Origin: Octopus sinensis
Lineage: Eukaryota
Reading direction: 5' to 3'
NCBI RefSeq assembly: GCF_006345805.1
Contig: NC_043023.1
Location: 7,006,001-7,070,000, forward strand
Length of the DNA stretch: 64,000 nt
The notes beneath the pieces were generated by a model. That model ran no database searches. It was not told the DNA's origin and worked only from the letters and a program-made list of their open reading frames with translations. The position numbers and the translations under genes are program-made. Positions 10,795 through 61,496 of the stretch are shown here, piece by piece. Within the stretch, counting starts at the first letter, position 1. Every line of letters begins with the position of its first letter.

Positions 10795-13640
10795 AATATA
10801 TCTCAATATCTCTGAACCACTTTTTGGCTATGAATCCCTTAAGTTCCCATTCTACTCTACGTGACCTCCATTAACATTGGATGCATATCAAAAAAAATAT
10901 TCCTACTGTTCGCTTATTAAATACTAAGAACTAGCTTAAAGGCCACACTCTGTGTGAACTTCTAAGCTAGCTCCTGTGGCAGGTTTATTGGGCATTCAAC
11001 CCCAAACTAAAGAGAGCAATAATAATAAAACCCTACCAGTATGGTATTACTTTAAATTCAGTTTAACCCTTGTGTTACCAACCTGGCTGAAACCGGCTCT
11101 TGCTTTCAGTACAAATGTCTTGTTTACATAAGTTTTGAATTAAAATCTTCCACCAAACCTTAGTCACAATTTATGTTCCTAACACTAGCTGAATGATGAC
11201 TAAGTTATTTTACTAAATTCTTTGTTATATTTAAAGTAATTGAAAGAAACACAGAGCATCTCAAAAAAATACGGTAACAAAAGGCTTAAGATATATAATA
11301 GAGAAACAATTCTTAACCCTTTCATTACCAACCCTGCTGAAACCGGCTCTGGCTCTGAGTTCAAATGTCTTGTTTTCATAAGTTTTGAATTAAAATCTTC
11401 CACCAAACCTTAGTCACAATTTATGTTCCTAACACTAACTGAATGATAACTAAGTTATTTTACTAAATTCTTTGTTATATCTAAAGTAATTGAAAGAAAC
11501 ACAGAGCATCTCAGCAGAAATATGCTAACAAAAGGGTTAAAATATATAATAGAGAAACAATTCTTAACCCTTTTGATACCAACCTGGCTGAAACTGCCTC
11601 TGGTTCTGAGTACAAATGTCTTGTTTTCATAAGTTTTGAATTAAAATTTTCCACCAAACTTTAGTCACAATTTATGTTCCTAACACTAGCTTTTCGCATT
11701 TCAGATTTATAGATATTGATTTACATCTATTTCCTCTTTCTTTCATCATTTCAGCCTGGTACATTGTGTAGCCTACAGTGGCTCTGCCAAACTGTACGAA
11801 GTCAGCTCCATAGCACAAACTGTCCTTCAACCAGATTTTATAGAGGTGTAAGTGGTTTTTTTATTTATTTATTTCACCACTTTCCTTTCTTCCTTCTTTC
11901 CATTCTACTCCCACTTTCCCTCCCATTCCCCTTCCTTCCTTTTGAATATGTTGGGAAGTACTGCTGTTACTATCATCGCTGCAGCACCGCTGTTTCACCG
12001 CTGCTGCTGTTGCTTCTACTGTTGGCTTTATTATAACAATTGCTGCCAGATTTGGCTCTGTACTGAGAAGCTTGCTTCTCAACCACATGGTTCCAGGTTC
12101 AGTCCCACTGTATGACACCTTGGGCAAGTGCCTTCTACTATAGCCTTAGGCCAACCAAAGCCTTGTGAGTGAATTTGGTAGACAGAAACTGAAAGAAGCC
12201 CATTGTGTGTGTATATATTTATACCAGTCCACCTGTGCATACCTTCCTTCTTGGGACACATAACTCTACTTGTGAAGACTTGTTGAGGCAAGTGAAAATC
12301 AAAAATCAAAGAATCAAATCAAAATCGATGAACATCAATGGAATTTGTAGTTTTGTGGTACCAGTGCCGGTGGCACATAAGAAAATCATCCGAACATTGC
12401 TGTAGCCAGTACCGCATCGACTGGCCTCCGTGCTGGTGGCACGTAACAAACACCATCCGATCGTGGCCGTGCCAGCCTCGCCTGGCCTCCGTGCCGGTAG
12501 CATGTAAAGAACACCATCCGAGCGTGGCCGTTCACCAGCCTCGTCTGGCACCTGTGTCGGTGGCACATAAAAAGCACCCATTACACTCACGGAGTGGTTG
12601 GCGTTAGGAAGGGCATCCAGCCATAGAAACACCGCCAGATCTGACTGGCCTGGTGCAGCCTTCGGGCTTCCCAGACCCCCAGTTGAACCGTCCAACCCAT
12701 GCCAGCATGGAAAGCGGACGTTAAACGATGATGATGATGATGATGACCAGGGACATGCCACCTGGATAGGCAAGGTAGGCAGTGCCTACCCTGAATAAAA
12801 TAGATTGATAGCAACATTTTCCTTATATGGCAAAATATGCACCTAATTCAATAAAATCATGATGGTTACTCTGATTACTATGCATAAAATGCGAAATAGT
12901 TTATTTTTTTGTAGATTAGGTAGACATAATTCGTTCCTGCCTTTCTATCTCTGTACTTAAGCTATGCATATTGCTGCTGTAGTACACATGCTGCGTACAC
13001 TCCTACAACAACGTTTTCTTTACGTAGTATAAAGGCAGAAGTAAATCTGCCTTCAACTCAGTTGCATGCCTGTGTTTCTCTCATCTTTTTGTCTGTTTTA
13101 CTACATAAACGTCACCAACTGCCTATCTGAGTAATTACTGATGGCACGTGCCTGATATATATGTATATATATATCATCATCACCATCGTTTAACATCCGC
13201 TTTCCATGCTGGCATGGGTTGGACGGTTTGATTGAGGACTGGCAAGCCAGGAGGTTGTACAAGATCAGACAGAAGCCTGATGCAGCCTCTTGGCTTGCCA
13301 GTCCTCAGTCAAACTGGCCAGCCCATACCAACATGGAAAGCGGACGTTAGTGTCTTGTGTTATAGCCTGGGACGACCAAAGCCTTTCCCCTTCTTTCTAC
13401 TCATCATATTGTCTCTCTCCTTCTCTCTTTTTCCACACTTTCACTGTACTTTATCTGTTTTTCTGTATTACAGACATGCGCAGGCGCTGGCCACTCTGAA
13501 GGCGTTTGCCCACTGGCTGTCACAGTACCACTCTGAGTCCCAAAAGATCAGTCAGCCCCTAAAGTTCACCATCCTTTTCTCTACGCTGGTCGAGGCTACC
13601 CTGCCTTTATTCCGGAAACAGGTCAGATCACTTATTATTA

Positions 13641-13690
<50 letters not shown>

Positions 13691-16600
13691 ATATTTTTTG
13701 TTTTTGTTTATGGTGGTGAGCTGGCAGAATTGTAGGCGCAGGCATGGCTGTGTGGTAAGAAGCTTGCTTCCCAACCACGTGGTTCTGGGTTCAGTCCTAC
13801 TGTGTGGCATCTTGAGCAAGTGTCTTCTGCTATAGCCACGGGCTGACCAAAGCCTTGTGAGTGGATTTTGTAAACAAAAACTGAAAGAAGCCAATCATAT
13901 ATATATGTATGTATGTATGTATTTTTGTGTCTATGTTAGTTCCCAAATCATCGCTTGTCAACCGATGTTGGTGTGTTTACATCCCCCTAACCTAATGGTT
14001 TGGCAAAAGAGACCGATAAAGTAAGTACTAAGTTTACAAAGAGTAAGTCCTGGGGTTGATTTGCTCGACTAAAGACGGTGCTCCAGCATGGCCACAGTCA
14101 CATGGCTGAAACAAGTAAATGAGAAAAAGAGAGAGTATTACATTTGACAAAGACATCTGAATGCTAAAGGCTTAGTATCAGGACTGTGGAGTCAGAGTTA
14201 GAAACAATTAAGGGATAGCTGGAGTCGGTAAAACGAAACTGACTCTGACTCACAATATTCTTTAATATAAACCAAAGTACAGACGTATGCATTTGCTTTA
14301 TATGTAAACCACAATTACTTAATTACATAGAGGAGTCGGAATCAGAGGTGCTAATGGTAGAGGAGTTGGAGTCAGAGGTGCTTATGGTAGAGGAGTCAAA
14401 GTTTTTTGTTTTGACTCCACAGCCCTGCTTAATATCCACCCCCCACACTTGTCTGTCTGTTTGTACGTATAGCTATTTACTAGCAGTAAAGCCCAGCATT
14501 ACTTGGGTTTGTTTTTTAGTTGTACTTAAAACAGTAGACTTTGATGTCACGTTAACAAAGTTTTGACATAGTTTCAATCTATGAATAAAAGTATAGAGTG
14601 GTGATGCTCAAGTTTGCTCTGAATGTGCTGCAAATGTGTAATGCCGACTCCAATTGTTGGTTAATATTCGTTCTATTAACATTATGGAGGAAAAATTACC
14701 CGTAGATATAAAGCAAAATGGAGCTCAAGTTTTGAACTGCACTGAAAATCTACTAAGAAGTTAACACTGCAACAGTATTCATTAAGAAAAAGTACAGGAA
14801 AATCCGTCGTTCGCTCAAACCCAGTGACATCACAAAAAAATTCTTTTCAACCCTTTAGAATTGGAATTTTTGAAAAGTAAAAATTTTGCATTAAGTAGCT
14901 TGTTATTCTCTTTAAGTGAACATTTTTCTGGTTGAAATACACCAAAAAATGGTGACACAGCAGTGAAAAAATTGTAAATAATAGGGATTTTCATAGAAAA
15001 AACGCACCATTTTGATGTAAATAATTTTTGGTGTTAACATGGTCCGATTTTAATTTTTTCTTCTATGGAAGGAAGAGCAAGCCTTCTTCTATCATATTCT
15101 CAATTTTGGTCAACTTGTGCCACAGGGTCTCGGAGGAGATAATGTTAGTTGAAGTCTACCAAACCTGCCACACAGATAACTTCAGCTTTATATATAGAGA
15201 GACTAGCAGTATCGCCCGGTGTTGCTTGAATCTCTTTCGACCCTTTAGAATTGAAATTTTTGAAAAGTAAAATTTCCGCACTATGTAGTTTGTTATTCTC
15301 TTTAAGTGAACATTTTTCTGGTTGAAATACACCAAAAAATGGTGACACAGCAGTCAAAAAATCGTAAAAAATAGGGATTTTATAAAAAAAAATGCAACCA
15401 TTTTGATGTAAATAATTTTTGGTGTTAGCATGGTCCAATTTGAATTTTTTCTCCTATGGAATGAAGAGCAAGCCTTCTTCTATCATACTCTCAATTTTGG
15501 TCAACTTGCGCCACAGGGTCTCGGAAGAGATAGTGTTAGTTGAAGGCTACCAAACCTGGCGCACACAGACAACTTCAGCTTTATATATAGAGAGACTAGC
15601 AGTATCGCCCGGTGTTGCTCGGGTTTTTTTTTGATCCTTTAGAATTGGAATTTTTGAAAAGTAAAAATTCCGCACTATGTAGTTTGTTATTCTCTTTAAG
15701 TGAACATTTTTCTGGTTGAAATACACCAAAAAATGGTGACACAGCAGTCAAAAAATCGTAAAAAATAGGGATTTTCATAGAAAAAAATGCACCATTTTGA
15801 TGTAATAATTTTTGGTGTTAGCATGGTCCAATTTGAATTTTTTCTCCTATGGAATGAAGAGCAAGCCTTCTTCTATCATACTCTCAATTTTGGTCAACTT
15901 GCGCCACAGGGTCTCGGAGAGAGATAGTGTTAGTTGAAGGCTACCAAACCTGGCGCACACAGACAACTTCAGCTTTATATATAGAGAGACTAGCAGTATC
16001 GCCGGTGTTGTTGCGGTTTTTTTTTTGATCCTTTAGAATTGGATTTTTGAAAAGTAAAAATTCCGCACTATGTAGTTTGTTATTCTCTTTAAGTGAACAT
16101 TTTTCTGGTTGAAATACACCAAAAAATGGTGACACAGCAGTCAAAAAATCGTAAAAAATAGGGATTTTCATAGAAAAAAATGCACCATTTTGATGTAAAT
16201 AATTTTTGGTGTTAACATGGTCCGATTTGAATTTTTTCTCCTATGGAATGAAGAGCAAGCCTTCTTCTATCATACTCTCAATTTTGGTCAACTTGCGCCA
16301 CAGGGTCTCGGAAGAGATAGTGTTAGTTGAAGGCTACCAAACCTGGCGCACACAGACAACTTCAGCTTTATATATAGAGAGACTAGCAGTATCGCCCGGT
16401 GTTGCTCGGGTTTTTTTTTGATCCTTTAGAATTGGAATTTTTGAAAAGTAAAAATTCCGCACTATGTAGTTTGTTATTCTCTTTAAGTGAACATTTTTCT
16501 GGTTGAAATACACCAAAAAATGGTGACACACCAGTCAAAAAATCGTAAAAAATAGGGATTTTCATAGAAAAAAATGCACCATTTTGATGTAAATAATTTT

Positions 16601-19600
16601 TGGTGTTAACATGGTCCGATTTGAATTTTTTCTCCTATGGAATGAAGAGCAAGCCTTCTTCTATCATACTCTCAATTTTGGTTAACTTGCGCCACAGGGT
16701 CTCGGAAGAGATAGTGTTAGTTGAAGGCTACCAAACCTGGCACACACAGACAACTTCAGCTTTATATATAGAGAGACTAGCAGTATCGCCCGGTGTTGCT
16801 CGGTTTTTTTTTTGATCCTTTAGAATTGGAATTTTTGAAAAGTAAAAATTCCGCACTATGTAGTTTGTTATTCTCTAAGTGAACATTTTTCTGGTTGAAA
16901 TACACCAAAAAATGGTGACACAGCAGTCAAAAAATCGTAAAAAATAGGGATTTTCATAGAAAAAAATGCACCATTTTGATGTAAATAATTTTTGGTGTTA
17001 ACATGGTCCGATTTGAATTTTTTCTCCTATGGAATGAAGAGCAAGCCTTCTTCTATCATACTCTCAATTTTGGTTAACTTGCGCCACAGGGTCTCGGAAG
17101 AGATAGTGTTAGTTGAAGGCTACCAAACCTGGCGCACACAGACAACTTCAGCTTTATATATAGAGACTAGCAGTATCGCCCGGTGTGCTCGGGTTTTTTT
17201 TTGATCCTTTAGAATTGGAATTTTTGAAAAGTAAAAATTCCGCACTATGTAGTTTGTTATTCTCTTTAAGTGAACATTTTTCTGGTTGAAATACACAAAA
17301 AAATGGTGACACAGCAGTCAAAAAATCGTAAAAAATAGGGATTTTCATAGAAAAAAATGCACCATTTTGATGTAAATAATTTTTGGTGTTAACATGGTCC
17401 GATTTGAATTTTTTCTCCTATGGAATGAAGAGCAAGCCTTCTTCTATCATACTCTCAATTTTGGTTAACTTGCGCCACAGGGTCTCGGAAGAGATAGTGT
17501 TAGTTGAAGGCTACCAAACCTGGCGCACACAGACAACTTCAGCTTATATATAGAGAGACTAGCAGTATCGCCCGGTGTTGCTCGGGTTTTTTTTTTGATC
17601 CTTTAGAATTGGAATTTTTGAAAAGTAAAAATTCCGCACTATGTGTTTGTTTATTCTCTTTAAGTGAACATTTTTCTGGTTGAAATACACCAAAAAATGG
17701 TGACACAGCAGTCAAAAAATCGTAAAAAATAGGGATTTTCATAGAAAAAAATGCACCATTTTGATGTAAATAATTTTTGGTGTTAGCATGGTCCAATTTG
17801 AATTTTTTCTCCTATGGAATGAAGAGCAAGCCTTCTTCTATCATACTCTCAATTTTGGTCAACTTGCGCCACAGGGTCTCGGAAGAGATAGTGTTAGTTG
17901 AAGGCTACCAAACCTGGCGCACACAGACAACTTCAGCTTTATATATAGAGAGACTAGCAGTATCGCCCGGTGTTGCTCGGGTTTTTTTTTTGATCCTTTA
18001 GAATTGGAATTTTTGAAAAGTAAAAATTCCGCACTATGTAGTTTGTTATTCTCTTTAAGTGAACATTTTTCTGGTTGAAATACACCAAAAAATGGTGACA
18101 CAGCAGTCAAAAAATCGTAAAAAATAGGGATTTTCATAGAAAAAAATGCACCATTTTGATGTAAATAATTTTTGGTGTTAACATGGTCCGATTTGAATTT
18201 TTTCTCCTATGGAATGAAGAGCAAGCCTTCTTCTATCATACTCTCAATTTTGGTCAACTTGCGCCACAGGGTCTCGGAAGAGATAGTGTTAGTTGAAGGC
18301 TACCAAACCTGGCGCACACAGACAACTTCAGCTTTATATAGAGAGACTAGCAGTATCGCCCGGTGTTGCTCGGGTTTTTTTGATCCTTTAGAATTGGAAT
18401 TTTTGAAAAGTAAAAATTCCGCACTATGTAGTTTGTTATTCTCTTTAAGTGAACATTTTTCTGGTTGAAATACACCAAAAAATGGTGACACAGCAGTCAA
18501 AAAATCGTAAAAAATAGGGATTTTCATAGAAAAAAATGCACCATTTTGATGTAAATAATTTTTGGTGTTAACATGGTCCGATTTGAATTTTTTCTCCTAT
18601 GGAATGAAGAGCAAGCCTTCTTCTATCATACTCTCAATTTTGGTTAACTTGCGCCACAGGGTCTCGGAAGAGATAGTGTTAGTTGAAGGCTACCAAACCT
18701 GGCGCACACAGACAACTTCAGCTTTATATATAGAGAGACTAGCAGTATCGCCCGGTGTTGCTCGGGTTTTTTTTTGATCCTTTAGAATTGGAATTTTTGA
18801 AAAGTAAAAATTCCGCACTATGTAGTTTGTTATTCTCTTTAAGTGAACATTTTTCTGGTTGAAATACACCAAAAAATGGTGACACAGCAGTCAAAAAATC
18901 GTAAAAAATAGGGATTTTCATAGAAAAAAATGCACCATTTTGATGTAAATAATTTTTGGTGTTAGCATGGTCCGATTTGAATTTTTTCTCCTATGGAATG
19001 AAGAGCAAGCCTTCTTCTATCATACTCTCAATTTTGGTTAACTTGCGCCACAGGGTCTCGGAAGAGATAGTGTTAGTTGAAGGCTACCAAACCTGGCGCA
19101 CACAGACAACTTCAGCTTTATATATAGAGAGACTAGCAGTATCGCCCGGTGTTGCTCGGGTTTTTTCTTGATCCTTTAGAATTGGAATTTTTGAAAAGTA
19201 AAAATTCCGCACTATGTAGTTTGTTATTCTCTTTAAGTGAACATTTTTCTGGTTGAAATACACCAAAAAATGGTGACACAGCAGTCAAAAAATCGTAAAG
19301 AATAGGGATTTTCATAGAAAAAAATGCACCATTTTGATGTAAATAATTTTTGGTGTTAACATGGTCCGATTTGATTTTTTCTCCTATGGAATGAAGAGCA
19401 AGCCTTCTTCTATCATACTCTCAATTTTGGTCAACTTGCGCCACAGGGTCTCGGAAGAGATAGTGTTAGTTGAAGGCTACCAAACCTGGCGCACACAGAC
19501 AACTTCAGCTTTATATATAGAGAGACTAGCAGTATCGCCGGTGTTGCTCAGGTTTTTTTTTGATCCTTTAGAATTGGAATTTTTGAAAAGTAAAAATTCC

Positions 19601-22600
19601 GCACTATGTAGTTTGTTATTCTCTTTAAGTGAACATTTTTCTGGTTGAAATACACCAAAAAATGGTGACACAGCAGTCAAAAAATCGTAAAAAATAGGGA
19701 TTTTCATAGAAAAAAATGCACCATTTTGATGTAAATAATTTTTGGTGTTAACATGGTCCGATTTGAATTTTTTCTCCTATGGAATGAAGAGCAAGCCTTC
19801 TTCTATCATACTCTCAATTTTGGTCAACTTGCGCCACAGGGTCTCGGAAGAGATAGTGTTAGTTGAAGGCTACCAAACCTGGCGCACACAGACAACTTCA
19901 GCTTTATATATAGAGAGACTAGCAGTATCGCCCGGTGTTGCTCAGTTTTTTTTTGATCCTTTAGAATTGGAATTTTTGAAAAGTAAAAATTCCGCACTAT
20001 GTAGTTTGTTATTCTCTTTAAGTGAACATTTTTCTGGTTGAAATACACCAAAAAATGGTGTGACACAGCAGTCAAAAATCGTAAAAAATAGGGATTTTCA
20101 TAGAAAAAAATGCACCATTTTGATGTAAATAATTTTTGTGTTAACATGGTCCGATTTGAATTTTTTCTCCTATGGAATGAAGAGCAAGCCTTCTTCTATC
20201 ATACTCTCAATTTTGGTCAACTTGCGCCACAGGGTCTCGGAAGAGATAGTGTTAGTTGAAGGCTACCAAACCTGGCGCACACAGACAACTTCAGCTTTAT
20301 ATATAGAGAGACTAGCAGTATCGCCCGGTGTTGCTCGGGTTTTTTTTTGATCCTTTAGAATTGGAATTTTTGAAAAGTAAAAATTCCGCACTATGTAGTT
20401 TGTTATTCTCTTTAAGTGAACATTTTTCTGGTTGAAATACACCAAAAAATGGTGACACAGCAGTCAAAAAATCGTAAAAAATAGGGATTTTCATAGAAAA
20501 AAATGCACCATTTTGATGTAAATAATTTTTGGTGTTAACATGGTCCGATTTGAATTTTTTCTCCTATGGAATGAAGAGCAAGCCTTCTTCTATCATACTC
20601 TCAATTTTGGTCAACTTGCGCCACAGGGTCTCGGAAGAGATAGTGTTAGTTGAAGGCTACCAAACCTGGCGCACACAGACAACTTCAGCTTTATATATAG
20701 AGAGACTAGCAGTATCGCCCGGTGTTGCTCGGGTTTTTTTTTGATCCTTTAGAATTGGAATTTTTGAAAAGTAAAAATTCCGCACTATGTAGTTTGTTAT
20801 TCTCTTTAAGTGAACATTTTTCTGGTTGAAATACACCAAAAAATGGTGACACACCAGTCAAAAAATCGTAAAAAATAGGGATTTTCATAGAAAAAAATGC
20901 ACCATTTGTTGTAAATATTTTTGGTGTTAACATGGTCCGATTTGAATTTTTTCTCCTATGGAATGAAGAGCAAGCCTTCTTCTATCATACTCTCAATTTT
21001 GGTTAACTTGCGCCACAGGGTCTCGGAAGAGGAAGAGATAGTGTTAGTTGAAGGCTACCAAACCTGGCACACACAGACAACTTCAGCTTTATATATAGAG
21101 AGACTAGCAGTATCGCCGGTGTTGCTCGGGTTTTTTTTTGATCTTTAGAATTGGAATTTTTGAAAAGTAAAAATTCCGCACTATGTAGTTTGTTATTCTC
21201 TTTAAGTGAACATTTTTCTGGTTGAATACACCAAAAAATGGTTGACACAGCAGTCAAAAAATCGTAAAAAAATAGGGATTTTCATAGAAAAAAATGCACC
21301 ATTGTTTGTATGTAAATATTTTTGGTGTTAACATGGTCCGATTGAATTTTTTCTCCTATGGAATGAAGAGCAAGCCTTCTTCTATCATACTCTCAATTTT
21401 GGTTAACTTGCGCCACAGGGTCTCGGAAGAGATAGTGTTAGTTGAAGGCTACCAAACCTGGCGCACACAGACAACTTCAGCTTTATATATAGAGAGACTA
21501 GCAGTATCGCCCGGTGTTGCTCGGGTTTTTTTTTGATCCTTTAGAATTGGAATTTTTGAAAAGTAAAAATTCCGCACTATGTTAGTGTTATTCTCTTTAA
21601 GTGAACATTTTTGGTTGAAATACACCAAAAAATGGGACACAGCAGTCAAAAAATCGATAAAAATAGGGATTTTCATAGAAAAAAATGCACCATTTTGATG
21701 TAAATAATTTTTGGTGTTAACATGGTCCGATTTGAATTTTTTCTCCTATGGAATGAAGAGCAAGCCTTCTTCTATCATACTCTCAATTTTGGTTAACTTG
21801 CGCCACAGGGTCTCGGAAGAGATAGTGTTAGTTGAAGGCTACCAAACCTGGCGCACACAGACAACTTCAGCTTTATATATAGAGAGACTAGCAGTATCGC
21901 CCGGTGTTGCTCGGGTTTTTTTTTGATCCTTTAGAATTGGAATTTTTGAAAAGTAAAAATTCCGCACTATGTAGTTTGTTATTCTCTTTAAGTGAACATT
22001 TTTCTGGTTGAAATACACCAAAAAATGGTGACACAGCAGTCAAAAAATCGTAAAAAATAGGGATTTTCATAGAAAAAAATGCACCATTTTGATGTAAACA
22101 ATTTTTGGTGTTAACATGGTCCGATTTGAATTTTTCTCCTATGGAATGAAGAGCAAGCCTTCTTCTATCATACTCTCAATTTTGGTTAACTTGCGCCACA
22201 GGGTCTCGGAAGAGATAGTGTTAGTTGAAGGCTACCAAACCTGGCGCACACAGACAACTTCAGCTTTATATATAGAGAGACTAGCAGTATCGCCCGGTGT
22301 TGCTCGGGTTTTTTTTTGATCCTTTAGAATTGGAATTTTTGAAAAGTAAAAATTCCGCACTATGTAGTTTGTTATTCTCTTTAAGTGAACATTTTTCTGG
22401 TTGAAATACACCAAAAAATGGTGACACAGCAGTCAAAAAATCGTAAAAAATAGGGATTTTCATAGAAAAAAATGCACCATTTTGATGTAAATAATTTTTG
22501 GTGTTAGCATGGTCCGATTGAATTTTTTCTCCTATGGAATGAAGAGCAAGCTTCTTCTATCATACTCTCAATTTTGGTTAACTTGCGCCACAGGGTCTCG

Positions 22601-25600
22601 GAAGAGATAGTGTTAGTTGAAGGCTACCAAACCTGGCGCACACAGACAACTTCAGCTTTATATATAGAGAGACTAGCAGTATCGCCCGGTGTTGCTCGGG
22701 TTTTTTCTTGATCCTTTAGAATTGGAATTTTTGAAAAGTAAAAATTCCGCACTATGTAGTTTGTTATTCTCTTTAAGTGAACATTTTTCTGGTTGAAATA
22801 CACCAAAAAATGGTGACACAGCAGTCAAAAAATCGTAAAAAATAGGGATTTTCATAGAAAAAAATGCACCATTTTGATGTAAATAATTTTTGGTGTTAAC
22901 ATGGTCCGATTTGAATTTTTTCTCCTATGGAATGAAGAGCAAGCCTTCTTCTATCATACTCTCAATTTTGGTTAACTTGCGCCACAGGGTCTCGAAGAGA
23001 TAGTGTTAGTTGAAGGCTACCAAACCTGGCGCACACAGACAACTTCAGCTTATATATAGAGAGACTAGCAGTATCGCCCGGTGTTGCTCAGGTTTTTTTT
23101 TGATCCTTTAGAATTGGAATTTTTGAAAAGTAAAAATTCCGCACTATGTAGTTTGTTATTCTCTTTAAGTGAACATTTTTCTGGTTGAAATACACCAAAA
23201 AATGGTGACACAGCAGTCAAAAAATCGTAAAAAATAGGGATTTTCATAGAAAAAAATGCACCATTTTGATGTAAATAATTTTTGGTGTTAGCATGGTCCG
23301 ATTTGAATTTTTTCTCCTATGGAATGAAGAGCAAGCCTTCTTCTATCATACTCTCAATTTTGGTTAACTTGCGCCACAGGGTCTCGGAAGAGATAGTGTT
23401 AGTTGAAGGCTACCAAACCTGGCGCACACAGACAACTTCAGCTTTATATATAGAGAGACTAGCAGTATCGCCCGGTGTTGCTCGGTTTTTTCTTGATCCT
23501 TTAGAATTGGAATTTTTGAAAAGTAAAAATTCCGCACTATGTAGTTTGTTATTCTCTTTAAGTGAACATTTTTCTGGTTGAAATACACCAAAAAATGGTG
23601 ACACAGCAGTCAAAAAATCGTAAAAAATAGGGATTTTCATAGAAAAAAATGCACCATTTTGATGTAAATAATTTTTGGTGTTAACATGGTCCGATTTGAA
23701 TTTTTTCTCCTATGGAATGAAGAGCAAGCCTTCTTCTATCATACTCTCAATTTTGGTTAACTTGCGCCACAGGGTCTCGGAAGAGATAGTGTTAGTTGAA
23801 GGCTACCAAACCTGGCGCACACAGACAACTTCAGCTTTATATATAGAGAGACTAGCAGTATCGCCCGGTGTTGCTCGGGTTTTTTCTTGATCCTTTAGAA
23901 TTGGAATTTTTGAAAAGTAAAAATTCCGCACTATGTAGTTGTTATTCTCTTTAAGTGAACATTTTTCTGGTTGAAATACACCAAAAAATGGTGACACAGC
24001 AGTCAAAAAATCGTAAAAAATAGGGATTTTCATAGAAAAAAATGCACCATTTTGATGTAAATAATTTTTGGTGTTAACATGGTCCGATTTGAATTTTTTC
24101 TCCTATGGAATGAAGAGCAAGCCTTCTTCTATCATACTCTCAATTTTGGTTAACTTGCGCCACAGGGTCTCGGAAGAGATAGTGTTAGTTGAAGGCTACC
24201 AAACCTGGCGCACACAGACAACTTCAGCTTTATATATAGAGAGACTAGCAGTATCGCCCGGTGTTGCTCGGGTTTTTTTTTGATCCTTTAGAATTGGAAT
24301 TTTTGAAAAGTAAAAATTCCGCACTATGTAGTTTGTTATTCTCTTTAAGTGAACATTTTTCTGGTTGAAATACACCAAAAAATGGTGACACAGCAGTCAA
24401 AAAATCGTAAAAAATAGGGATTTTCATAGAAAAAAATGCACCATTTTGATGTAAATAATTTTTGGTGTTAGCATGGTCCGATTTGAATTTTTTCTCCTAT
24501 GGAATGAAGAGCAAGCCTTCTTCTATCATACTCTCAATTTTGGTTAACTTGCGCCACAGGGTCTCGGAAGAGATAGTGTTAGTTGAAGGCTACCAACCTG
24601 GCGCACACAGACAACTTCAGCTTTATATATAGAGAGACTAGCAGTATCGCCCGGTGTTGCTCGGGTTTTTTCTTGATCCTTTAGAATTGGAATTTTTGAA
24701 AAGTAAAAATTCCGCACTATGTAGTTTGTTATTCTCTTTAAGTGAACATTTTTCTGGTTGAAATACACCAAAAAATGGTGACACAGCAGTCAAAAAATCG
24801 TAAAAAATAGGGATTTTCATAGAAAAAAATGCACCATTTTGATGTAAATAATTTTTGGTGTTAACATGGTCCGATTTGAATTTTTTCTCCTATGGAATGA
24901 AGAGCAAGCCTTCTTCTATCATACTCTCAATTTTGGTCAACTTGCGCCACAGGGTCTCGGAAGAGATAGTGTTAGTTGAAGGCTACCAAACCTGGTGCAC
25001 ACAGACAACTTCAGCTTTATATATAGAGAGACTAGCAGTATCGCCCGGTGTTGCTCAGGTTTTTTTTTGATCCTTTAGAATTGGAATTTTTGAAAAGTAA
25101 AAATTCCGCACTATGTAGTTTGTTATTCTCTTTAAGTGAACATTTTTCTGGTTGAAATACACCAAAAAATGGTGACACAGCAGTCAAAAAATCGTAAAAA
25201 ATAGGGATTTTCATAGAAAAAAATGCACCATTTTGATGTAAATAATTTTTGGTGTTAACATGGTCCGATTTGAATTTTTTCTCCTATGGAATGAAGAGCA
25301 AGCCTTCTTCTATCATACTCTCAATTTTGGTCAACTTGCGCCACAGGGTCTCGGAGAGATAGTGTTAGTTGAAGGCTACCAAACCTGGCGCACACAGACA
25401 ACTTCAGCTTTATATATAGAGAGACTAGCAGTATCGCCCGGTGTTGCTCAGGTTTTTTTTTGATCCTTTAGAATTGGAATTTTTGAGAAGTAAAAATTCC
25501 GCACTATGTAGTTTGTTATTCTCTTTAAGTGAACATTTTTCTGGTTGAAATACACCAAAAAATGGTGACACAGCAGTCAAAAAATCGTAAAAAATAGGGA

Positions 25601-28431
25601 TTTTCATAGAAAAAAATGCACCATTTTGATGTAAAAAATTTTTGGTGTTAGCATGGTCCAATTTGAATTTTTTCTCCTATGGAATGAAGAGCAAGCCTTC
25701 TTCTATCATACTCTCAATTTTGGTTAACTTGTGCCACAGGGTCTCGGAGGAGATAGTGTTAATTGAAGGCTACCAAACCTGCCACACACACACACATAAC
25801 TTCAGCTTTATATATATATATAAATTTATCTTCTATCCTCAGATACCCGAGAAGATTGTCCAGTCAGCTGCTCATTTACTGCTTTCTCTGATGGTCACTG
25901 TACGGCCGTCCTATCTACTACAGATGACCGCTGTCCACAACCTTTACTCACAGATTGGCCACGGACACTGTAAGGACATGCCACAGGAGGTTAGTACCAG
26001 AGTTTTGTTGTTGGTTTTTGCCCCAAGTTAGTCCTGATCCACCAGGCCTATTATCAAAGACGTTCCAACTGTGACCATCTTGTCTTTAGTTCAAACATAA
26101 CGGAGCACTCCGTCAGTTATGATGACAAGGGTTCCAGCTGATACGATCAACGGAACAGCCTGCTCGTGAAATTAATGTGCAAGTGGCTGAGTACTCCACA
26201 GACATGTGTACCCAGAATGTGACAAGGCTGGCCCTTTCGAATTACAGGTACAACTCATTTTTGCCAGCTGAGTGGACTGGAGCAACGTGGAATAAAGTGT
26301 CTGGATCAAGGACACAACGCGTCGCCGGGATTTGAACTCATGACCTTACAATCGTGAGCCGAATGCCCTAGCCACTAAGCCACGTGCCTTCACAATTCTA
26401 ACATAGTGTATCTAGGACTACATTAACTAAAGTATAATATAGTAGTTAGTATCAGTGGCTATAGTTGTTGCTTAGCCCTAGGTCAGGCCTGATCCAGCAG
26501 ACCAATGATCGAAGATGCTCCAGCTGTGACCACCCTGTCTTTAATTTAAATTTAGTTTAGCTAAGCCTACACCTTATCTAATGTATAGTATAGTAATTTG
26601 TATTAGGAGCTCTAGTTGTTGCTTAGCCCTAGGTCAGGCCTGATCCAGCAGACCAATGATCAAAGATGTTCCAACTGTGACCATCCTGTCTTTTATTCAG
26701 GCATAGTGTATCTAGGACTACATTATCTAATGTATAGTAGTAAGTATTAGGGGCTCTAGTTGTTGTTTAGCCCCAGATCAGTCCAGAATTTATAGACCTA
26801 TAATCAAGGGTGTGCCATCTGTCACCATCCTTTCCTTATATTCAGGCATGGTGTATCTAGGACTACATTATCTAATGTATAGTATATTAGTGGCTATAGT
26901 TGTTGTTTAGCCCCAGGTCAGACCTGATCTATCAGACCTGTGATCAAAGATGTTCCAGCTGTGACCATCTCATCTTATATTTAAACATAGTGTATCTAGG
27001 ACTACATTATCTAATGTATAGTATAGTAGTGAGTAATGTTGTTGTATTGCCTTGGTTAGCTCAGCTGAAGCTGACTTATAATCAAAGGCGTTCCAACTGT
27101 GACCATCCCATCATTTATTCCAACATGGAGTATCTATGACTACATGTTCTCATGTATAGTAGTTAGTATTAGTGCTTATGGTTGTTTAGCCCAATGTCAG
27201 TCCTGGTCCGGTAGATCTGTGATCAAAGATGTTTTGCCTATCACCATCCTGTCTCTTATTGATGCATAGTATATCTAGGACTACTTTATCTAATGTGTCC
27301 TCTTTTCCAGATGTTAGTGTGTGATATGAGGGTGATTTGACAACTATTTCTAGCTAAACCCGTGGAGCAGTCCCATAGACATTTCCTTGTACTTGTATCA
27401 TCATCATCATTGTTTAGCATCCGCTTTCCATGCTGGCATGGGTTGGACGGTGCAACTGGGGTCTGGGAAGCCAGAAGGCTGCACCAGGCCCAGTCTGATC
27501 TGGCAGTGTTTCTACAGCTGGATGCCTTTCCTAACACCAACCACTCCATGAGTGTAGTGGGTGCTTTTTACATGCCAGACGAGGCTGGCAAATGGCCACG
27601 ATCAGATGGTGCTTTTTACGTGCTACCGGCACGGAGGCCAGTCGAGGCTGGCAACGGCCACGATCGGATGGTGCTTTTTACGTGCCATTGGCATGGAGGC
27701 AGTCGGGGCGGCGCTGGCAATGGCCACGTTCGGATGGTTCTCTTATGTGCCACCGGCACTGGTATCACAGCTACGATTTCCATTGATGTTGATCGATTTT
27801 GATTTTGTTTTTGTATATGTATGTGTTTGTGTGTGAGAGAAAGAGCTAACACAAATTTATTTATGAACCTTTCTATCTGGTTTCAATCCCTGGCAGGTGC
27901 AGTTGTTGTTGTACAGAGCTTTGTCACACTATCTACTATTGCCGTGGCCACACCTCTCCGACACTGACCAGGACTGGGAGAAAAGAGCAGCCTACCATCG
28001 CGATTTTACGCGGCAACTTACGTTAGAGTTCTGCCAACTGAGGGATACGCAGGCGCTTGTGGAAAACAAGGCCTTACAGGAGAGTGGTGAGTAGTGGTGC
28101 TAGTGTTGTTGTGGTGTAAAGACATCATTATGTGTGTGTGGCATGGAAAGATTTTCTGATTTGGGGAAACTTTGGGGTGTCAGAAAAATTCGTTCTCTCT
28201 TTTTTTCTTTACTCTTTTACTTGTTTCAGTCATTTGACTGCGGCCATGCTGGAGCACCGCCTTTTAGTCGAGCAAATCGCCCCCAGGACTTATTCTTTGT
28301 AAGCCTAGTACTTATTCTATTGGTCTCTTTTGCCAAACCGCTAAGTTACGGGAACATAAACACACCAGCATCGGTTGTCAAGCGATGTTGGGGGGACAAA
28401 CACAGATACACAAAGATATACACACATACAT

Positions 28432-28488
<57 letters not shown>

Positions 28489-31400
28489 CAGGCTTCTTTC
28501 AGTTTCCGTCTACCAAATCCACTCACAAGGCTTTGGTCAACCCAAGGCTATAGTAGAAGACACTTAACCAAGGTGCCACGCAGTGGGACTGAACCTCCGG
28601 AACCATGTAGTTCGTAAGCAAACTACCTACCACACAGCCACTCCTTTGCCTTCATTTTTTTTCCCATTTATTTTAATCCTTATTTTTCTGGTTGTGAGGT
28701 AAGAAGGTTGCTTCCCAGCCATATGATTTCCAAGTTCAGTCCCACTGTGTGGCACCTTGGGCAAGTGTCTTCTACTATAGTCTCAGACCGACCAAAACCT
28801 TGAGAGTGGATTTGGTAAACAGAAATGAAAGAAACCTGTTGTGTGCGTGTGTGTGTATATATAATATGTACATATTTATATTTATGTGTGTCTGTCATTG
28901 TGTCTGTTTGACCCCCAGCACTGCTTGACAACCAGTGATGGTGTGTTTGTATCCTCTCAACTTAGCAGTTTGACAAAAGGGACCAATAGAATAAGTACCA
29001 GGGTCAAAGTTGGTAACAAAAACAGAACAGTGAACACAAACAGGAAGGGCTGCTAAGCCTAAACAAAGTGAGGTAGAGAATGCGGAGAAGCAAGCTTGGA
29101 CAGGAGACAGACAAGAATATGTGTGATTTGTCTAGCTGTATCAGGAGGAAAGAAAGAATGATGGCCGATGGTCACAAGAGAGCAAAGGCGAAAGAGTGAG
29201 GGAAAGAGAGTGACAGACAGAGAACGGCGAAGGGGAGAGAAAAAATTAGAGAAAGGTTAAGAGAGAAAAAAATTAGAGAAAGGATAAGAGAGAAAAAAAC
29301 GAGAGGGGGAGAAGGGGAGATAGAAAGAGTTAGAGAGAAGAAGAGAGAAAATGAAAGAGTGATAAAATAGGAGAGTAATAGAATAGAAAGTGTCACCCTT
29401 TGGTCAGGATTGACCATGAGATTTCACTGAGAAAGTTACCCTCCAAGGCACAAATTTGGGCAAGGTTGTTTATGGAAGACCAGCAGTCGTCCATGCATAC
29501 CAGCCTCCCTTCTCCATACCACCAATGTTATCCAAGGGAAAGGCAAAGGCTGATACAGTTTGGTACCAGTGATGTCACAACTCATTTCTACAGCTGAGTG
29601 AACTGGAGCAATGTGACATAAAGTGTCTTGCTCAAGAACACATCACATAGCCCAGTTCGGAAATTGAACTCACTACCTCATGGTTGTGAGCCTGACACTC
29701 TAACCACTGGACCATGTGCCTTTATTGTATTATATATATACTAGCAGTATCGCCCGGCGTTGCTCGGGTTTGTAAGGGAAATAACTATACAGCATTTTTA
29801 GAGAGTTATAGCCAAAAAATAGCAAAAAAAATGCATTAAAAATGGAAAAAAAATGAGGGGTAAATTTTTTTTAAAAATCGTTGACTCATCGTAGACATTT
29901 TTAGAGAGTTACTTCCCTTATATAATAGCGAAAAAAATGCATTAAAATGGGAAAAAATGATGGTAAATTTTTTTTTAAATCGTAGACTCATCGTAGACGC
30001 GCGCTAATACCCGGAAGGGCTCGATATGAATCACGACTATAAGATACCCGGTTTTGGTTAAACTGCACCGCAAAATGTGGGAGTAAGGAATCTAAATCGA
30101 AGGAGACAGACACTCACACAACTACAGTTTTATATATACTCTCTCTCTCTCTTTTACTCTTTTCAGTCATTTGACTGCGGCCATGCTGGAGCACCGCCTT
30201 TAGTCGAGCAAATCAACCCCGGGACTTATTCTTTGTAAGCCCAGTACTTATTCTATCGGTCTCTTTTTGCCGAACCGCTAAGTGACGGGGACGTAAACAC
30301 ACCAGCATCGGTTGTCAAGCAATGCTAGGGGGACAAACACAGACACACAAACACACACATATATATATACATACATATATACGACAGGCTTCTTTCAGTT
30401 TCCGTCTGCCAAATCCACTCACAAGGCATTGGTCGGCCCGGGGCTATAGCAGAAGACACTCGCCCAAAGTGCCACGCAGTGGGACTGAACCCGGAACCAT
30501 GTGGTTGGTTAGCAAGCTACTTACCACACTGCCACTCCTGCGCCTATATATATTTATATATATAGATGTGTGTAAATAAATAAATATGATTGTGTGTGTA
30601 TATCTTTTTATTGATCTTTCTGTCCACAGCCAAGTGCCTGATCGAGAACACGCTAAAGATGTGCCAGGATTGGATCGAGAACATTGCTTCGGAGTCAAAC
30701 AAAAGCAAACAGATATGTTACCAATCCCTACACGAGATTGTCCAGGTGACGCTGGCCATTTTTCCAGTCTACATACACCAACCAGGTGCGTATTGATCTG
30801 CTCTCCTCTCCTCTTTTCTCCTCCCTGCTCTGTCTTATCATTCCCGAGGTATCATCCCGTTCACTTTGGCTGTTGAATTTATATTTGGATTTATGGAGAA
30901 CCGTTTCATTTCTAGAAACTGTTTCATCTTTTCCTACCTTGTCCTGTCTACAGTAATTGTTGAGGAGTTCAGTGTCATTTCTGAACACTGGTTGATGTTG
31001 CTGCTGAATAATAATAATAATAATAATAATTATTATTATTATTGTGCAGTCTTCTAGCACCTACAGAGTATCTCAACAGGCATGATAGAGCTGCACAATA
31101 TATTCACTGGGTAATCTGCAAAAACCTGGATTTGCCCCATGAAAAAAACTGGTGGGAACACAAACCACCTTCAGTGCTTGAAAATGACCACATCTCACTC
31201 CTCTGGAACTTCCCCATTCAAACTGACAGAAAGATAGATGCAAATAGGCCAGACATCATATTGAAAGACTTCAACAAAGAACATGCCTCCTCATTGATAT
31301 GACTGTCCCAATCGATATAAACGTATCTGTCAAGACCTACCAAAAACTGAGCAAATATAAAGATCTTGAAATAGAAATCAGCAAAATGTGGAAGCTGAAG

Positions 31401-33749: not shown

Positions 33750-36700
33750 AAATAATAAATGCCCTGATAACAAAGAAAATATAACAAGTACAAAACTCCC
33801 AATAGGAGGAGGTGCTTTGAAAGGTTACTCGTGAAAAAACCCATAAAAGCCATGGATACCTGATCAAATGGGGCAAGAGCCCCTTCTCCTTTTATATTAC
33901 TTTTTACAGGTATAATCTGAGAATAGGTCCATCCATACTGGCCATTCTTCCAACATTCACCCACCTTTCAACAAATTTGCTACAAGACAACACCTCAATA
34001 ATAAGTTTAAGGTCAAACAATGGACAAGCAAATCTGTGGTATTGAACAGAATATTTGCTGTAATAATAATAATAATAATGCCCTGATGCAGTACCAGGCA
34101 GTGGTTCTCATGGTTTCTGATCTTAACTGATTGGAAGTGTTATCATGTACATTGTTTTGCCTTGGTATAAAAGATGGGCTACAGCAAATATTCTGCTCAA
34201 TACCACAGATTTGCTTGTCAGTTGTTTGACCGTAACCAGTTGAGCATGTCCCTTAGTGGCTGACGATATGTGTATCTCTGATCATGAGCAGAAGTAGTGG
34301 GGGAGCATCATGGCCATGTGTTGAGAGGAATTCTTGGAGGTTTGGATAATTCACCTTTGGAAACATGGGTGGTTCGTTCAACATCCTTAAACAATCCTTG
34401 TTATTTTCGATGTTATTATTACTGGCAGTATAGCTCGGGTTTGTTTTTTAGTTGCACTTAAAACGGCAGACTTTGATGTTGCGTTAACAAAATTTTGACA
34501 AAGTTTCAATATTTTTTGAAAAGTAAATATTTTGCATTATGTAGCTTGTTATTCTCTTTAGGTGAACATTTTTCTGGTTGAAATACACCGAAAAATGACG
34601 ACACAGCAATGAAAAAATCGTAAAAAATAGGGATTTTCATAGAAAAGAAGCACCTTTTTGATGTAAATAATTTTTGGTGTTAACATGGTCCGATTTGAAT
34701 TTTTTTACCTTCTACAGAATGAAGAGCAAGCCTTCTTCTATCATACTCTCAATTTTGGTCAACTTGCGCTGCAGGGTCTCAGAGGAGATAGTGTTAGTTG
34801 TGATGCATGTGCCTGGTGTACCCTTATCAGACGGGTAGTTATGATGTGTACACTGGGCTTCGTATATTTTACCCCATGTCACTTTGATGGCATGAACTGC
34901 TCTCTCACTCAATAATAATAATAATGATAATAATAATAATTGTTTCCTGCTTGTTCTTTTGCAGATACTGCTGACCATATTCTCAGTTTCTTTCTGGCCG
35001 TCTTCCAAGGTTTGCGGGTACAAATGGGTGTGAACTTCACCGAAGGAATCATCCAGACGTTTATGGGTTTATTTACGAGGTGAGTAACTTTCACGTTTTT
35101 CTGGGTTTTTTTTTCTCCAGCGTTGCCAGAGCGGCTAACTGGCTTTCGTGCCGGTGGCACGTAAAAGGCACCATTCGAGCGTGATCATTACCAGCGTCGC
35201 ATTACTGGCACCTGTGCCGGTGGCATGTATAAAAAGATTCAAGCGAGGTCGTTGCCAGTACCGCCTGACTGGCCCTCGTGCCAGTGGCATGTAAAAGCAC
35301 TCACTACACTCTCAGAGTGGTTGGCATTAGGAAGGGCATCCACCTGTAGAAACACTGCCAGATCAGACTGGAGCTTGGTGCAGCCATCTAGTTCACCAGT
35401 CTTCAGTCAAATCATCCAACCCATGCCAGCATGGAAAACGGACGTTAAACGATGATGATGGTGGTGTAATGCATAAACTTTACATTTGACAGAATTATCT
35501 TTTGATGGGGGATTTTTCAGATTTTTTTTTTCACAGTACCCTTCAAAATAATCTGGAGTATCTCTTTAACAGTAAAAAAAAATTTTTTGGAAAATGTTTT
35601 TCTCCTACCCCCTCTCCACTACTGTCCATCTTCCCCTCTCCGGACTGATTTCAGTCGATTTTTTTGGAAGAGTAAAAATTTTGCATTATGTAGCTTGTTA
35701 TTCTCTTTAAGTGAACATTTTTCTGATTGAAATACACTGAAAAATGGCAACAAAGCAGTAAAAAAAATCGTAAAAAATAGGGATTTTCATAGAAAAAAAG
35801 CACCTTTTTGATGTAAATAATTTTTGGTGTTAACATGGTCCAATTTGAATTTTTTCTTCTACGGAATGAAGAGCAAGCCTTTTTCTATCATACTCTCAAT
35901 TTTGGTCAACTTGCACTGCAGGGTCTCGGAGGAGATAGTGTGAGTTGAAGGCTACCAAACCTGCCACACAGACAACTTCAGCTTTATATGTATAGATTAT
36001 TATTATTATTATTGAAGGCGGCGAGCTGGCAGAAACGTTAGGACGCGGGGCGAAATGCGTAGCCGTATTTCGTCTGCCATTACGCTCTGGGTTCAAATTC
36101 CGCCGAGGTCGACTTTGCCTTTCATCCTTTCGGGGTCGATTAAATAAGTACCAGTTACGCACTGGGGTCGATATAATCGACTTAATCCGTTTGTCTGTCC
36201 TTGTTTGTCCCTTCTGTGTTTAGCCCCTTGTGGGTAGTAAAGAAATGTATTATTATCATTATTTTTGAGGTCACTGCTTGGAATTGAACTCGGAATCTTG
36301 GAGGTAGTAGCCAGCGCTCTTAACCACTACGCCATGTGCCCTTGGGCATAAATATACAACTCTTAAATATTGAACTGAAAAAATGTGTGATTAAAGGGAG
36401 ATTTGGCTGTTGTTTCTAGCATATCCACTGATCACCTTCCTCATTTAAATTTTGTGAATTTCTGCAATTTTCAGGGAGCAGCTGACGGAGAACATATTAC
36501 ACGAAAACTCTGCAGGATGCCGAGTTGTGGAAAAGTGAGTAGATCTGTTTTTGTGTCAGTCTGTTTCTGAAGCATGAGTAGGTTGTATATGTATGTCTTT
36601 TGTCTCTCAGTCATAGGACTGTGGCCATGCTAGAGCATTGCCTTGAATGGTTTTAGCTGAACAATACCCCAGTATTTTTTTATTTTCCAAGCCTCTTGCT

Positions 36701-48834: not shown

Positions 48835-48874
<40 letters not shown>

Positions 48875-49553: not shown

Positions 49554-49607
<54 letters not shown>

Positions 49608-61433: not shown

Positions 61434-61496
<63 letters not shown>

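What the first reader, a model, noticed from the sequence alone, without database searches (positions are those of the whole stretch)
14480..25824. 11.3-kb intronic satellite built from 28 precise head-to-tail mini-Helitron units
Seen: the roughly 393-bp monomer is a complete non-autonomous Helitron on the minus strand (5' TC, 3' CCCG-N8-CGGG hairpin 8 nt before CTAG). Units join exactly as CTAG|TC with no intervening host DNA, and the array sits between an A and a T. Known: Helitrons move by rolling-circle replication and can form tandem arrays. Inference: a rolling-circle concatemer seeded a locus-specific satellite that now makes up 93% of a 12.2-kb XPO6 intron. I cannot tell whether this family is already described.
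Basis: partly seen in the sequence, partly recalled or inferred. Interest (0 to 1): 0.85.

Follow-up and report, generated by a model that had tools for sequence, protein, structure and literature searches.

The report
Head-to-tail Helitron array in octopus intron
An 11.3-kb tandem array in an intron of an octopus exportin-6 gene is built from whole copies of a small non-autonomous Helitron transposon joined end to end. This is a clean new example of a phenomenon already known in plants and bats, not a new kind of element.

Summary
The array is real. It spans 14480-25822 on the minus strand and fills 92.8% of the 12,221-bp exportin-6 intron. It ends 20 nt before the splice acceptor.

It is not 28 equal units. 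It holds 27 short (S) units of 390-398 bp and one 723-bp long-form (L) relative at the 3' edge.

All 27 internal junctions read CTAG|TC. The unit has the canonical Helitron features:
- a 5' TC and a 3' CTAG;
- a 16-nt palindrome (CCCG-N8-CGGG) 8 nt before CTAG, although its stem is only 4 bp;
- no inverted repeats at or near the two ends.

Four dispersed relatives in the window stop at the same ends, next to A (5') and T (3'), so the unit boundaries are real.

- The S|L junction joins two different elements precisely.
- The two edge S units carry 10-11 mutation events against an interior mean of 3.2.

I therefore favour a small seed made by Helitron transposition, later expanded and homogenised by unequal exchange.

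Tandem Helitron arrays are already described in plants and bats, so this is a new member of a known kind. I could not test copy number, the orthologous intron or genome-wide distribution.

The parts
15203..25822 (-). 27 head-to-tail short (S-type) Helitron-like units, u2-u28, each 390-398 bp. The consensus is 394 bp: 5' TCTCTCTATATATAAAG ... CCCGAGCAACACCGGGCGATACTGCTAG 3'.
   Evidence: Interior units are 96.7-99.7% identical to the consensus. Edge unit u2 is 94.7% and u28 is 95.2%.
14480..15202 (-). u1, a 723-bp long-form (L-type) family member at the 3' edge of the array. It has a body homologous to S positions 1-354, then a 372-bp tail that ends CCCAAGTAATGCTGGGCTTTACTGCTAG, followed by the host T.
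   Evidence: It shares diagnostic bases with dispersed copies A and B rather than with u2-u28. Its 5' TC abuts the CTAG of u2 exactly.
20312..20705 (-). Representative interior unit (u15), 99.7% identical to the consensus.
20312..20339 (-). 3' terminus of a unit: the 16-nt palindrome CCCG-N8-CGGG, an 8-nt spacer, then CTAG.
   Evidence: The same 31 nt are 97% identical in dispersed elements d1 and d2.
25798..25822 (-). Eroded 5' end of the outermost unit u28, which reads TATATA where the consensus reads TCTCTC.
   Evidence: (3 mismatches).
13622..25842 (+). The exportin-6 intron that holds the array. It is 12,221 bp; the donor GT is at 13622 and the acceptor AG at 25841-25842.
   Evidence: The array ends 20 nt upstream of the acceptor and lies antisense to the gene.
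13474..13621 (+). Upstream exportin-6 exon.
   Evidence: 91% identical to the O. vulgaris retrocopy.
25843..25988 (+). Downstream exportin-6 exon (IPEKIVQSAAHLL...).
40189..40578 (+). d2, a dispersed ~390-bp element with a different interior but the same 3' terminus and a related 5' end. Both ends are intact: A|TC...CTAG|T, inside a (TA)n run.
29741..30137 (-). d1, a second copy of the d family, 92% identical to d2. Its 3' end reads CTAG|TATATA; its 5' end is unclear.
34422..34800 (-). Copy A, a dispersed 5'-truncated relative of u1. It has the body from consensus position 54 and an L-type tail that lacks about 287 bp. Its degenerate 3' end reads CCAG|T.
35661..35996 (-). Copy B, a dispersed relative covering consensus positions 3-339 at 91% identity. 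Its 5' end is intact (A|TCTATACATATAAAG). It has no recognisable canonical 3' terminus.

Best explanation
The array is made of whole non-autonomous canonical Helitron elements of an octopus family, lying antisense in an exportin-6 intron.

A 723-bp long form (u1) sits at the 3' edge. Upstream of it are 27 copies of a 393-bp internal-deletion derivative. Each copy is joined to the next as CTAG|TC, the same junction that Helitron circular intermediates carry.

Most likely history:
1. The precise junctions were first made by the Helitron machinery. This happened either by integration of a short rolling-circle multimer, or by insertion into the A|T site that exists at the 5' boundary of a resident element (host A followed by the element's T). 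The result was a small seed of a few units next to the long form. This step is inferred.
2. The seed then grew to 27 units by unequal sister-chromatid or homologous exchange, or by replication slippage in register. This copies the precise junction without any transposase. It keeps the interior nearly identical while the two edge units age. The pattern is shown; the process is inferred.

The array is probably inert DNA that the gene tolerates. The 27 short units carry no AATAAA signal and no strong donor splice site on the sense strand.
For: Helitron identity:
- 5' TC in 27 of 28 units, in copy B and in d2; 3' CTAG in 28 of 28 units, in d1 and in d2.
- A 16-nt palindrome ends 12 nt from the 3' end. 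In u1 it is kept through a compensatory change (CCCG/CGGG to CCCA/TGGG).
- No terminal or subterminal inverted repeats. No tRNA or Rfam match.
- All four independent 3' ends are followed by T. Both intact independent 5' ends are preceded by A.
- d1 and d2 share only the termini with the array unit (31 nt at 97%, and 28 nt at 86%). This is what non-autonomous families served by one transposase look like.

The unit boundaries are real:
- Dispersed copies and the array edge stop at the same bases.
- The chance of the TC/CTRR phase plus the hairpin is 0.4%.

Multi-step history:
- u1 groups with dispersed copies A and B, not with u2-u28, yet joins u2 precisely.
- Edge units carry 10 and 11 mutation events against an interior mean of 3.24 (Poisson p = 0.002 and 0.0005). 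The interior alone fits a Poisson distribution (p = 0.67).
- u11-13 and u25-27 share variant patterns at a 14-unit lag, with 2 substitutions over three units.

A precise junction cannot arise from exchange between the flanks, because (TA)n flanks would leave TA between the units.

Tolerance: the short units have no AATAAA, ATTAAA or GTAAGT on the sense strand.

Literature:
- Defining features of canonical Helitrons: PMC4067079, PMC3342881.
- Precise TC-to-CTAG circle junction, and head-to-tail tandem arrays in plants and bats: PMC5876387.
- Arrays attributed to rolling-circle concatemers: PMC11934779, citing Xiong 2016.
Against: - The hairpin is weak (4-bp stem, z = -1.1).
- No autonomous Rep/helicase partner is in the window.
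- No empty site was available.
- Only one dispersed element (d2) has both ends intact, and it sits in (TA)n, so a TA target duplication cannot be formally excluded there.
- The outer 5' end of the array lacks TC.
- An old-edge, young-interior pattern also arises if a large concatemer was inserted at once and only the interior was later homogenised. The size of the seed is therefore not determined.
- Many interior differences are indels in homopolymer runs and could be sequencing errors.
- Copy number could not be checked against reads.
Confidence: 0.6

Rival explanations
1. One-step rolling-circle concatemer. A circular intermediate of the 393-bp element was replicated for many rounds because its weak terminator was read through. 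The roughly 27-mer was then integrated in a single event, and later gene conversion homogenised only the interior.
For: - The CTAG|TC junctions are precise and identical to the Helitron circle junction (PMC5876387).
- The weak 4-bp hairpin could favour termination failure. PMC5876387 reports that the hairpin acts as the transposition terminator.
- No higher-order repeat period appears: identity is flat with lag, 97.2-97.7%.
- The literature attributes plant arrays to this mechanism (PMC11934779, citing Xiong 2016).
Against: - The u2|u1 junction joins two different elements (about 6% divergent, with 330 bp extra). It needs a separate event.
- The edge units are about three times more diverged than the interior, so exchange or conversion has to be invoked afterwards anyway.
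- No other multimer of the family occurs among the four dispersed copies in the window.
Confidence: 0.25
2. Not a Helitron. It is an ordinary satellite, or a tandemly duplicated fragment of another repeat class, whose arbitrary phase happens to read TC...CTAG.
For: - The TC/CTRR phase alone occurs in 30% of shuffled monomers.
- The hairpin is not significantly more stable than in shuffles.
- No Rep/helicase gene was found.
Against: - Independent dispersed elements (d1, d2, copy A, copy B) and the array edge end at exactly these bases, next to A and T.
- d1 and d2 share only the two termini with the unit.
- With the hairpin included, the chance is 0.4%.
- One compensatory change preserves the stem in u1.
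- No inverted repeats linking the two ends, and no tRNA-like head.
Confidence: 0.05
3. The copy number is an assembly artefact. The locus really holds far fewer, or many more, units.
For: Arrays of 393-bp units at 97-99% identity are hard to assemble. Many differences between units are homopolymer indels.
Against: - Units carry private and shared substitutions in a non-periodic mosaic.
- Both edges are unique and joined to unique flanks.
- This does not touch the identity of the unit or the junctions.
Confidence: 0.1

Closest known systems
[quoted passage not shown]
   Same: Whole non-autonomous Helitrons are repeated head to tail, with the 3' CTRR joined directly to the 5' TC. These arrays are interpreted as products of rolling-circle replication.
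   Different: - The host is a cephalopod, and the array is intronic, 20 nt from a splice acceptor, rather than centromeric.
- The array ends in a heterologous long-form element.
- The age gradient from edge to interior points to later unequal exchange.
I could not read the original 2016 and 2007 papers, so this comparison rests on how other papers cite them.
Helraiser circular intermediates (PMC5876387)
   Same: The junction sequence is the same: the 5' TC of the left end is joined directly to the 3' CTAG of the right end. The hairpin acts as the terminator.
   Different: Those are extrachromosomal circles seen in cell culture. Here the junction is chromosomal and repeated 27 times, and no transposase was identified.
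Helentron-associated (HINE) tandem repeats and satellite-like arrays in the oyster Crassostrea gigas (PMC7492417, PMC8268682)
   Same: A mollusc, a rolling-circle transposon and a link to tandem repeats.
   Different: - In the oyster the repeats are an internal module carried inside Helentron derivatives.
- Helentron derivatives, as described in mites and insects (PMC4067079), have subterminal inverted repeats and prefer TT sites.
- Here the whole element is the repeat unit, there are no subterminal inverted repeats, and the flanks are A and T.
Subtelomeric Helitron-derived repeat expansions in Hydractinia and Nematostella (PMC11934779)
   Same: Local amplification of one Helitron subfamily into tandem-like blocks in an invertebrate.
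   Different: Those are subtelomeric and on a megabase scale. This is a single 11-kb intronic array.

Membership tests
Canonical Helitron (non-autonomous) | 5' terminal TC | tested here: met
   27 of 28 array units, copy B and d2 begin with TC. The outermost unit u28 does not; it reads TATATA.
Canonical Helitron (non-autonomous) | 3' terminal CTRR | tested here: met
   CTAG ends 28 of 28 units, d1 and d2. Copy A has a degenerate CCAG.
Canonical Helitron (non-autonomous) | A 16-20-nt palindrome about 11 nt from the 3' end | tested here: met
   CCCG-N8-CGGG is 16 nt and ends 12 nt from the 3' end. It is conserved in d1 and d2, and u1 keeps it through a compensatory change (CCCA/TGGG). Caveat: the stem is only 4 bp, at -3.3 kcal/mol and z = -1.1.
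Canonical Helitron (non-autonomous) | Insertion between host A and T | tested here: met
   The 3' flank is T at 4 of 4 independent ends (array, d1, d2, copy A). The 5' flank is A at 2 of 2 intact independent ends (d2, copy B). The 5' flank of the array itself is ambiguous.
Canonical Helitron (non-autonomous) | No target-site duplication, shown by an empty site | tested here: inconclusive
   No duplication is evident at the array flanks (AAATT... and TAAATAG). The only element with both ends intact (d2) lies in (TA)n, which would hide a TA duplication. No empty or orthologous site was obtainable.
Canonical Helitron (non-autonomous) | No terminal inverted repeats | tested here: met
   No inverted repeat links the two ends of the S unit or of d2.
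Canonical Helitron (non-autonomous) | An autonomous Rep/helicase element with matching termini in the same genome | not testable with these tools
   No such ORF is in the 64-kb window, and no octopus genome was searchable. Octopus genomes are reported to hold Helitrons (0.7-3.7% of the genome, PMC6279123; PMC13282606).
Helentron / HINE / DINE-1-like | 12-15-bp subterminal inverted repeats, T-runs at the ends, and insertion at TT | tested here: not met
   No subterminal inverted repeats. The flanks are A and T, not T and T. Criteria are from PMC4067079.
MITE / inverted-repeat DNA transposon | Terminal inverted repeats with a target-site duplication | tested here: not met
   One search finds no terminal inverted repeats.
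SINE | A tRNA-, 7SL- or 5S-derived head, an A-rich or simple-repeat tail, and a target-site duplication | tested here: not met
   No tRNA gene and no Rfam family. The ends are TC...CTAG.
Satellite DNA | A long head-to-tail array of a monomer, with concerted evolution | tested here: met
   27.9 copies at 97% identity, with a homogenised interior and diverged edges.
Satellite DNA | Genome-wide abundance, multiple arrays or heterochromatic location | not testable with these tools
   Only this window and one 20-kb O. vulgaris locus with no copies were available.

The most novel reading that the evidence does not exclude
The array could be a natural record of how Helitron transposition itself builds tandems in an animal germline. 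Two observations point that way. First, a short form is joined precisely to a different long form. Second, the terminator hairpin is unusually weak (4-bp stem). Together they would mean that this family either integrates preferentially at the A|TC boundary of resident copies or routinely reads through its terminator on circular intermediates. The near-identity of the interior units (up to 99.7%) would then imply a currently or very recently active Rep/helicase in this octopus.
Probability: 0.15. Interest if true: 0.55.

Novelty: new member of a known kind. Interest (0 to 1): 0.33.

Why it matters
It adds a cephalopod example, with cleanly resolved ends, to the short list of satellites built from whole Helitrons.

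The locus preserves the array edges, a junction between two different family members, and an age gradient among units. It is therefore a good place to ask how much of such an array is made by the transposase and how much by later unequal exchange.

It also shows that an essential-looking gene (exportin-6) tolerates an 11-kb repeat ending 20 nt from a splice acceptor.

It does not change what is known about Helitrons.

Tried and rejected
- Searching for the orthologous intron. The only octopus hit for the flanking exons was an intronless O. vulgaris ORF (P0003/L001). It is a processed retrocopy, not the ortholog, and its 20-kb locus holds no family copy.
- Looking for copies elsewhere through predicted proteins. 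A 100-aa ORF spanning a unit junction has no homologue in the protein collection.
- Sampling random octopus loci through a retrotransposon ORF. The O. bimaculoides hits have no contig on record, and another hit gave only 1-kb Logan contigs from unknown organisms.
- Exact scans for the 28-nt terminus in the metagenome, prokaryotic-genome and viral collections: 0 matches each.
- A higher-order repeat period: none, identity is flat with lag.
- A tRNA or structured-RNA origin: none.
- A Rep/helicase ORF in the window: none.
- Poly(A) signals or strong donor sites on the gene's sense strand inside the short units: none.
Full report
**1. The observation**

Tandem Repeats Finder reports one dominant array at 14852-25816, with period 393, 27.9 copies, 97% matches and 1% indels. 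On the + strand every unit begins with CTAGCAGT. There are 28 such starts, from 14480 to 25425. The 28-nt terminus occurs 25 times at up to 3 mismatches, against 0 expected from shuffles. The 25-nt opposite end occurs 26 times against 0 expected.

Read on the minus strand, a unit is 5' TCTCTCTATATATAAAG ... AAACCCGAGCAACACCGGGCGATACTGCTAG 3'. All 27 internal junctions read CTAG|TC with nothing between them.

The flanking exons (13474-13621 and 25843-25988) translate to exportin-6. They are 35-37% identical to bivalve exportin-6 and 85% identical to an Octopus vulgaris protein. The intron 13622-25842 is 12,221 bp, and the array (14480-25822, 11,343 bp) is 92.8% of it. The array is antisense to the gene and ends 20 nt before the acceptor AG.

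**2. Where the description needs correcting**

- *Unit lengths.* The lengths are 723 bp, then 27 values between 390 and 398 bp. The 723-bp unit u1 (14480-15202) matches consensus positions 1-354 at 93.8%. It then continues into 372 bp of unrelated sequence that ends in its own terminus, CCCAAGTAATGCTGGGCTTTACTGCTAG.
- *Outer 5' end.* The outermost unit, u28, reads TATATA where all the others read TCTCTC. The terminal TC and the flanking A cannot be seen there. Only the 3' side (CTAG|T at 14480/14479) is clear.
- *Hairpin.* The stem is 4 bp. Folded as DNA it gives -3.3 kcal/mol, no better than 28 of 200 shuffles. The full 28-nt terminus, which contains the palindrome, is exact in only 16 of the 27 short units.

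**3. Is the phase real or chosen?**

A tandem repeat can be cut anywhere, and a CTRR|TC hexamer occurs in 30% of shuffled monomers. Requiring a GC-rich 4-bp hairpin at the right distance lowers this to 0.4%.

Stronger evidence comes from four dispersed relatives in the same window:

- d2 (40189-40578, + strand) and d1 (29741-30137, - strand) are 92% identical to each other. They share with the array unit only the last 31 nt (97%) and about 28 nt at the 5' end (86%).
- d2 has both ends intact, reading A|TC...CTAG|T inside a (TA)n run. d1 ends CTAG|TATATA.
- Copy B (35661-35996) is 91% identical to consensus positions 3-339 and begins A|TCTATACATATAAAG.
- Copy A (34422-34800) is a 5'-truncated relative with a u1-like tail, ending ...CCAG|T.

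Independent copies therefore stop at the same bases as the array units. T follows all four independent 3' ends, and A precedes both intact 5' ends.

No inverted repeat links the two ends. There is no tRNA gene and no Rfam match. In u1 the stem changes from CCCG/CGGG to CCCA/TGGG, which is one compensatory change.

These are the defining features of canonical Helitrons: 5' TC, 3' CTRR, a 16-20-nt palindrome about 11 nt from the end, A|T insertion and no target duplication (PMC4067079, PMC3342881). They are not those of Helentrons, which have subterminal inverted repeats and TT targets (PMC4067079).

I found no Rep/helicase ORF in the window, so the autonomous partner remains untested.

**4. Relationships within the family**

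The alignment shows that u1, copy A and copy B share states such as AAGCTACATAATGCAAAAT (u1 differs from this string at one base). Units u2-u28 share AAACTACATAGTGCGGAAT instead. So u1 is a separate long-form (L) member.

The 393-bp unit is an internal-deletion derivative (S). It lacks about 330 bp between GGGTTGAAAAGAA and CTAAAAAACAAACCC. Copy A carries a different deletion of about 287 bp.

Unit u2, next to u1, still has GGGTCGAAAGAG where the interior units have GGATCAAAAAAAA. This is closer to the long form.

**5. Age structure of the array**

Identity to the consensus is 96.7-99.7% for u3-u27, but 94.7% for u2 and 95.2% for u28.

I counted clustered differences as single events. On that count the two edge units have 10 and 11 events against an interior mean of 3.24 (Poisson p = 0.002 and 0.0005). 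The interior alone fits a Poisson distribution (p = 0.67).

Identity does not depend on lag (97.2-97.7%), so there is no higher-order repeat. Units u11-13 and u25-27 do share a variant pattern, with 2 substitutions over three units at a 14-unit lag.

Diverged edges around a homogeneous interior are the classical signature of unequal exchange or conversion within an array. That statement rests on established knowledge of satellite evolution.

**6. Mechanism**

A precise CTAG|TC junction cannot be produced by exchange between host flanks. With TA-rich flanks, that would leave TA between the units. The first junctions must therefore have been made by a Helitron-specific process.

Helraiser circles carry exactly this TC-to-CTAG junction. 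Head-to-tail arrays in plants and bats have been read as rolling-circle products (PMC5876387; PMC11934779, citing Xiong et al. 2016).

However, the u2|u1 junction joins two different elements, which one circular template cannot give. The simplest reading is an integration into the A|T formed by the host A and the first T of the resident long form. A composite transposed by terminator read-through is the alternative.

Once two units lie in register, unequal exchange copies the junction without any transposase. This also explains the age gradient.

I therefore favour a small Helitron-made seed followed by local expansion (confidence about 0.6). A one-step concatemer of about 27 units with later interior homogenisation is the main rival (about 0.25). 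The data in the window cannot fix the size of the seed.

A rough dating uses the calibration quoted for octopus, JC distance 0.09 for about 25 My (PMC13282606):

| Comparison | Divergence | Approximate age |
|---|---|---|
| Dispersed copies A and B vs consensus | about 9% | fits the reported Helitron wave (about 25 My) |
| Edge units | about 2.5-3% | about 7-8 My |
| Interior units | 1% or less | a few My at most |

This dating is inference only.

**7. Effect on the gene**

The short units contain no AATAAA, ATTAAA or GTAAGT on the gene's sense strand. This is compatible with the array being tolerated.

Because the array ends 20 nt from the acceptor, the branch point probably lies in or next to unit u28. 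This is inferred and not tested.

**8. Comparison with what is known, and novelty**

Tandem arrays of whole Helitrons are known. Octopus genomes are reported to contain 0.7-3.7% Helitrons (PMC6279123), and a recent curated O. vulgaris annotation lists Helitron families (PMC13282606). That annotation and the other octopus and cephalopod papers my searches returned mention no such array. In bivalves the link between rolling-circle elements and satellites runs through internal repeats of Helentron derivatives (PMC7492417), which is a different architecture.

This is a new member of a known kind. The heterotypic junction and the age gradient are the details worth following up.

**9. Limits**

- No octopus genome, reads or repeat library could be queried.
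- The only external octopus DNA obtained was a 20-kb locus around an exportin-6 retrocopy, with no family copies.
- Scans of the metagenome, prokaryotic-genome and viral collections were empty.
- Copy number, genome-wide distribution, the empty site and the autonomous partner all remain open.

Noticed in passing
L001:10001-10549 (O. vulgaris OX597825.1); window 9245-9434, 13474-13621, 25853-25948: The only octopus protein hit (P0003) is an intronless 182-aa ORF, a processed retrocopy of exportin-6. It is 91-94% identical to three window exons. It lacks the first 12 nt (IPEK) of the exon that follows the array, which suggests an alternative acceptor 12 nt downstream or a deletion in the retrocopy.
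   Followed up: partly
window 26395-27296: A second, older tandem repeat (151 bp x 6.3 copies, 73% matches) lies in the next intron. It is unrelated to the Helitron array.
   Followed up: no
window 29793-29998 and 40334-40526: The d-family Helitron-like elements carry an internal duplication of about 103 bp (85% identity). They therefore contain a small tandem repeat inside the element as well.
   Followed up: partly
window 2289-2420, 12417-12578, 27574-27759, 39948-40067, 58304-58446: There are many copies of an abundant SINE-like repeat with 61-66-bp internal duplications (GGTGCTTTTTACGTGCCACC...). One of them lies directly upstream of d2.
   Followed up: no
window 32108-32626 (+): A 172-aa ORF related to reverse-transcriptase-associated proteins is 85% identical to O. 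bimaculoides A0A0L8FXY1. A UniRef entry labelled Escherichia coli (P0116) is 82% identical to it, which looks like contamination or mislabelling in that record.
   Followed up: no
window 20363-20387 (and the same place in every unit): A perfect 9-bp AT-rich hairpin (GGAATTTTT-N7-AAAAATTCC) lies about 50 nt from the 3' end of each short unit. It has a longer perfect stem than the 4-bp canonical terminator palindrome. Its role, if any, is unknown.
   Followed up: no
window 48108-50533 and 61372-61994: Kilobase-scale TA/TG-rich microsatellite tracts lie in downstream introns.
   Followed up: no
window 35600-35665 (-): Copy B has no canonical CTAG terminus. Where homology to the family ends, there is a different palindrome (GACTGAAATCAGTC). 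This may be an alternative or newly acquired 3' end.
   Followed up: no
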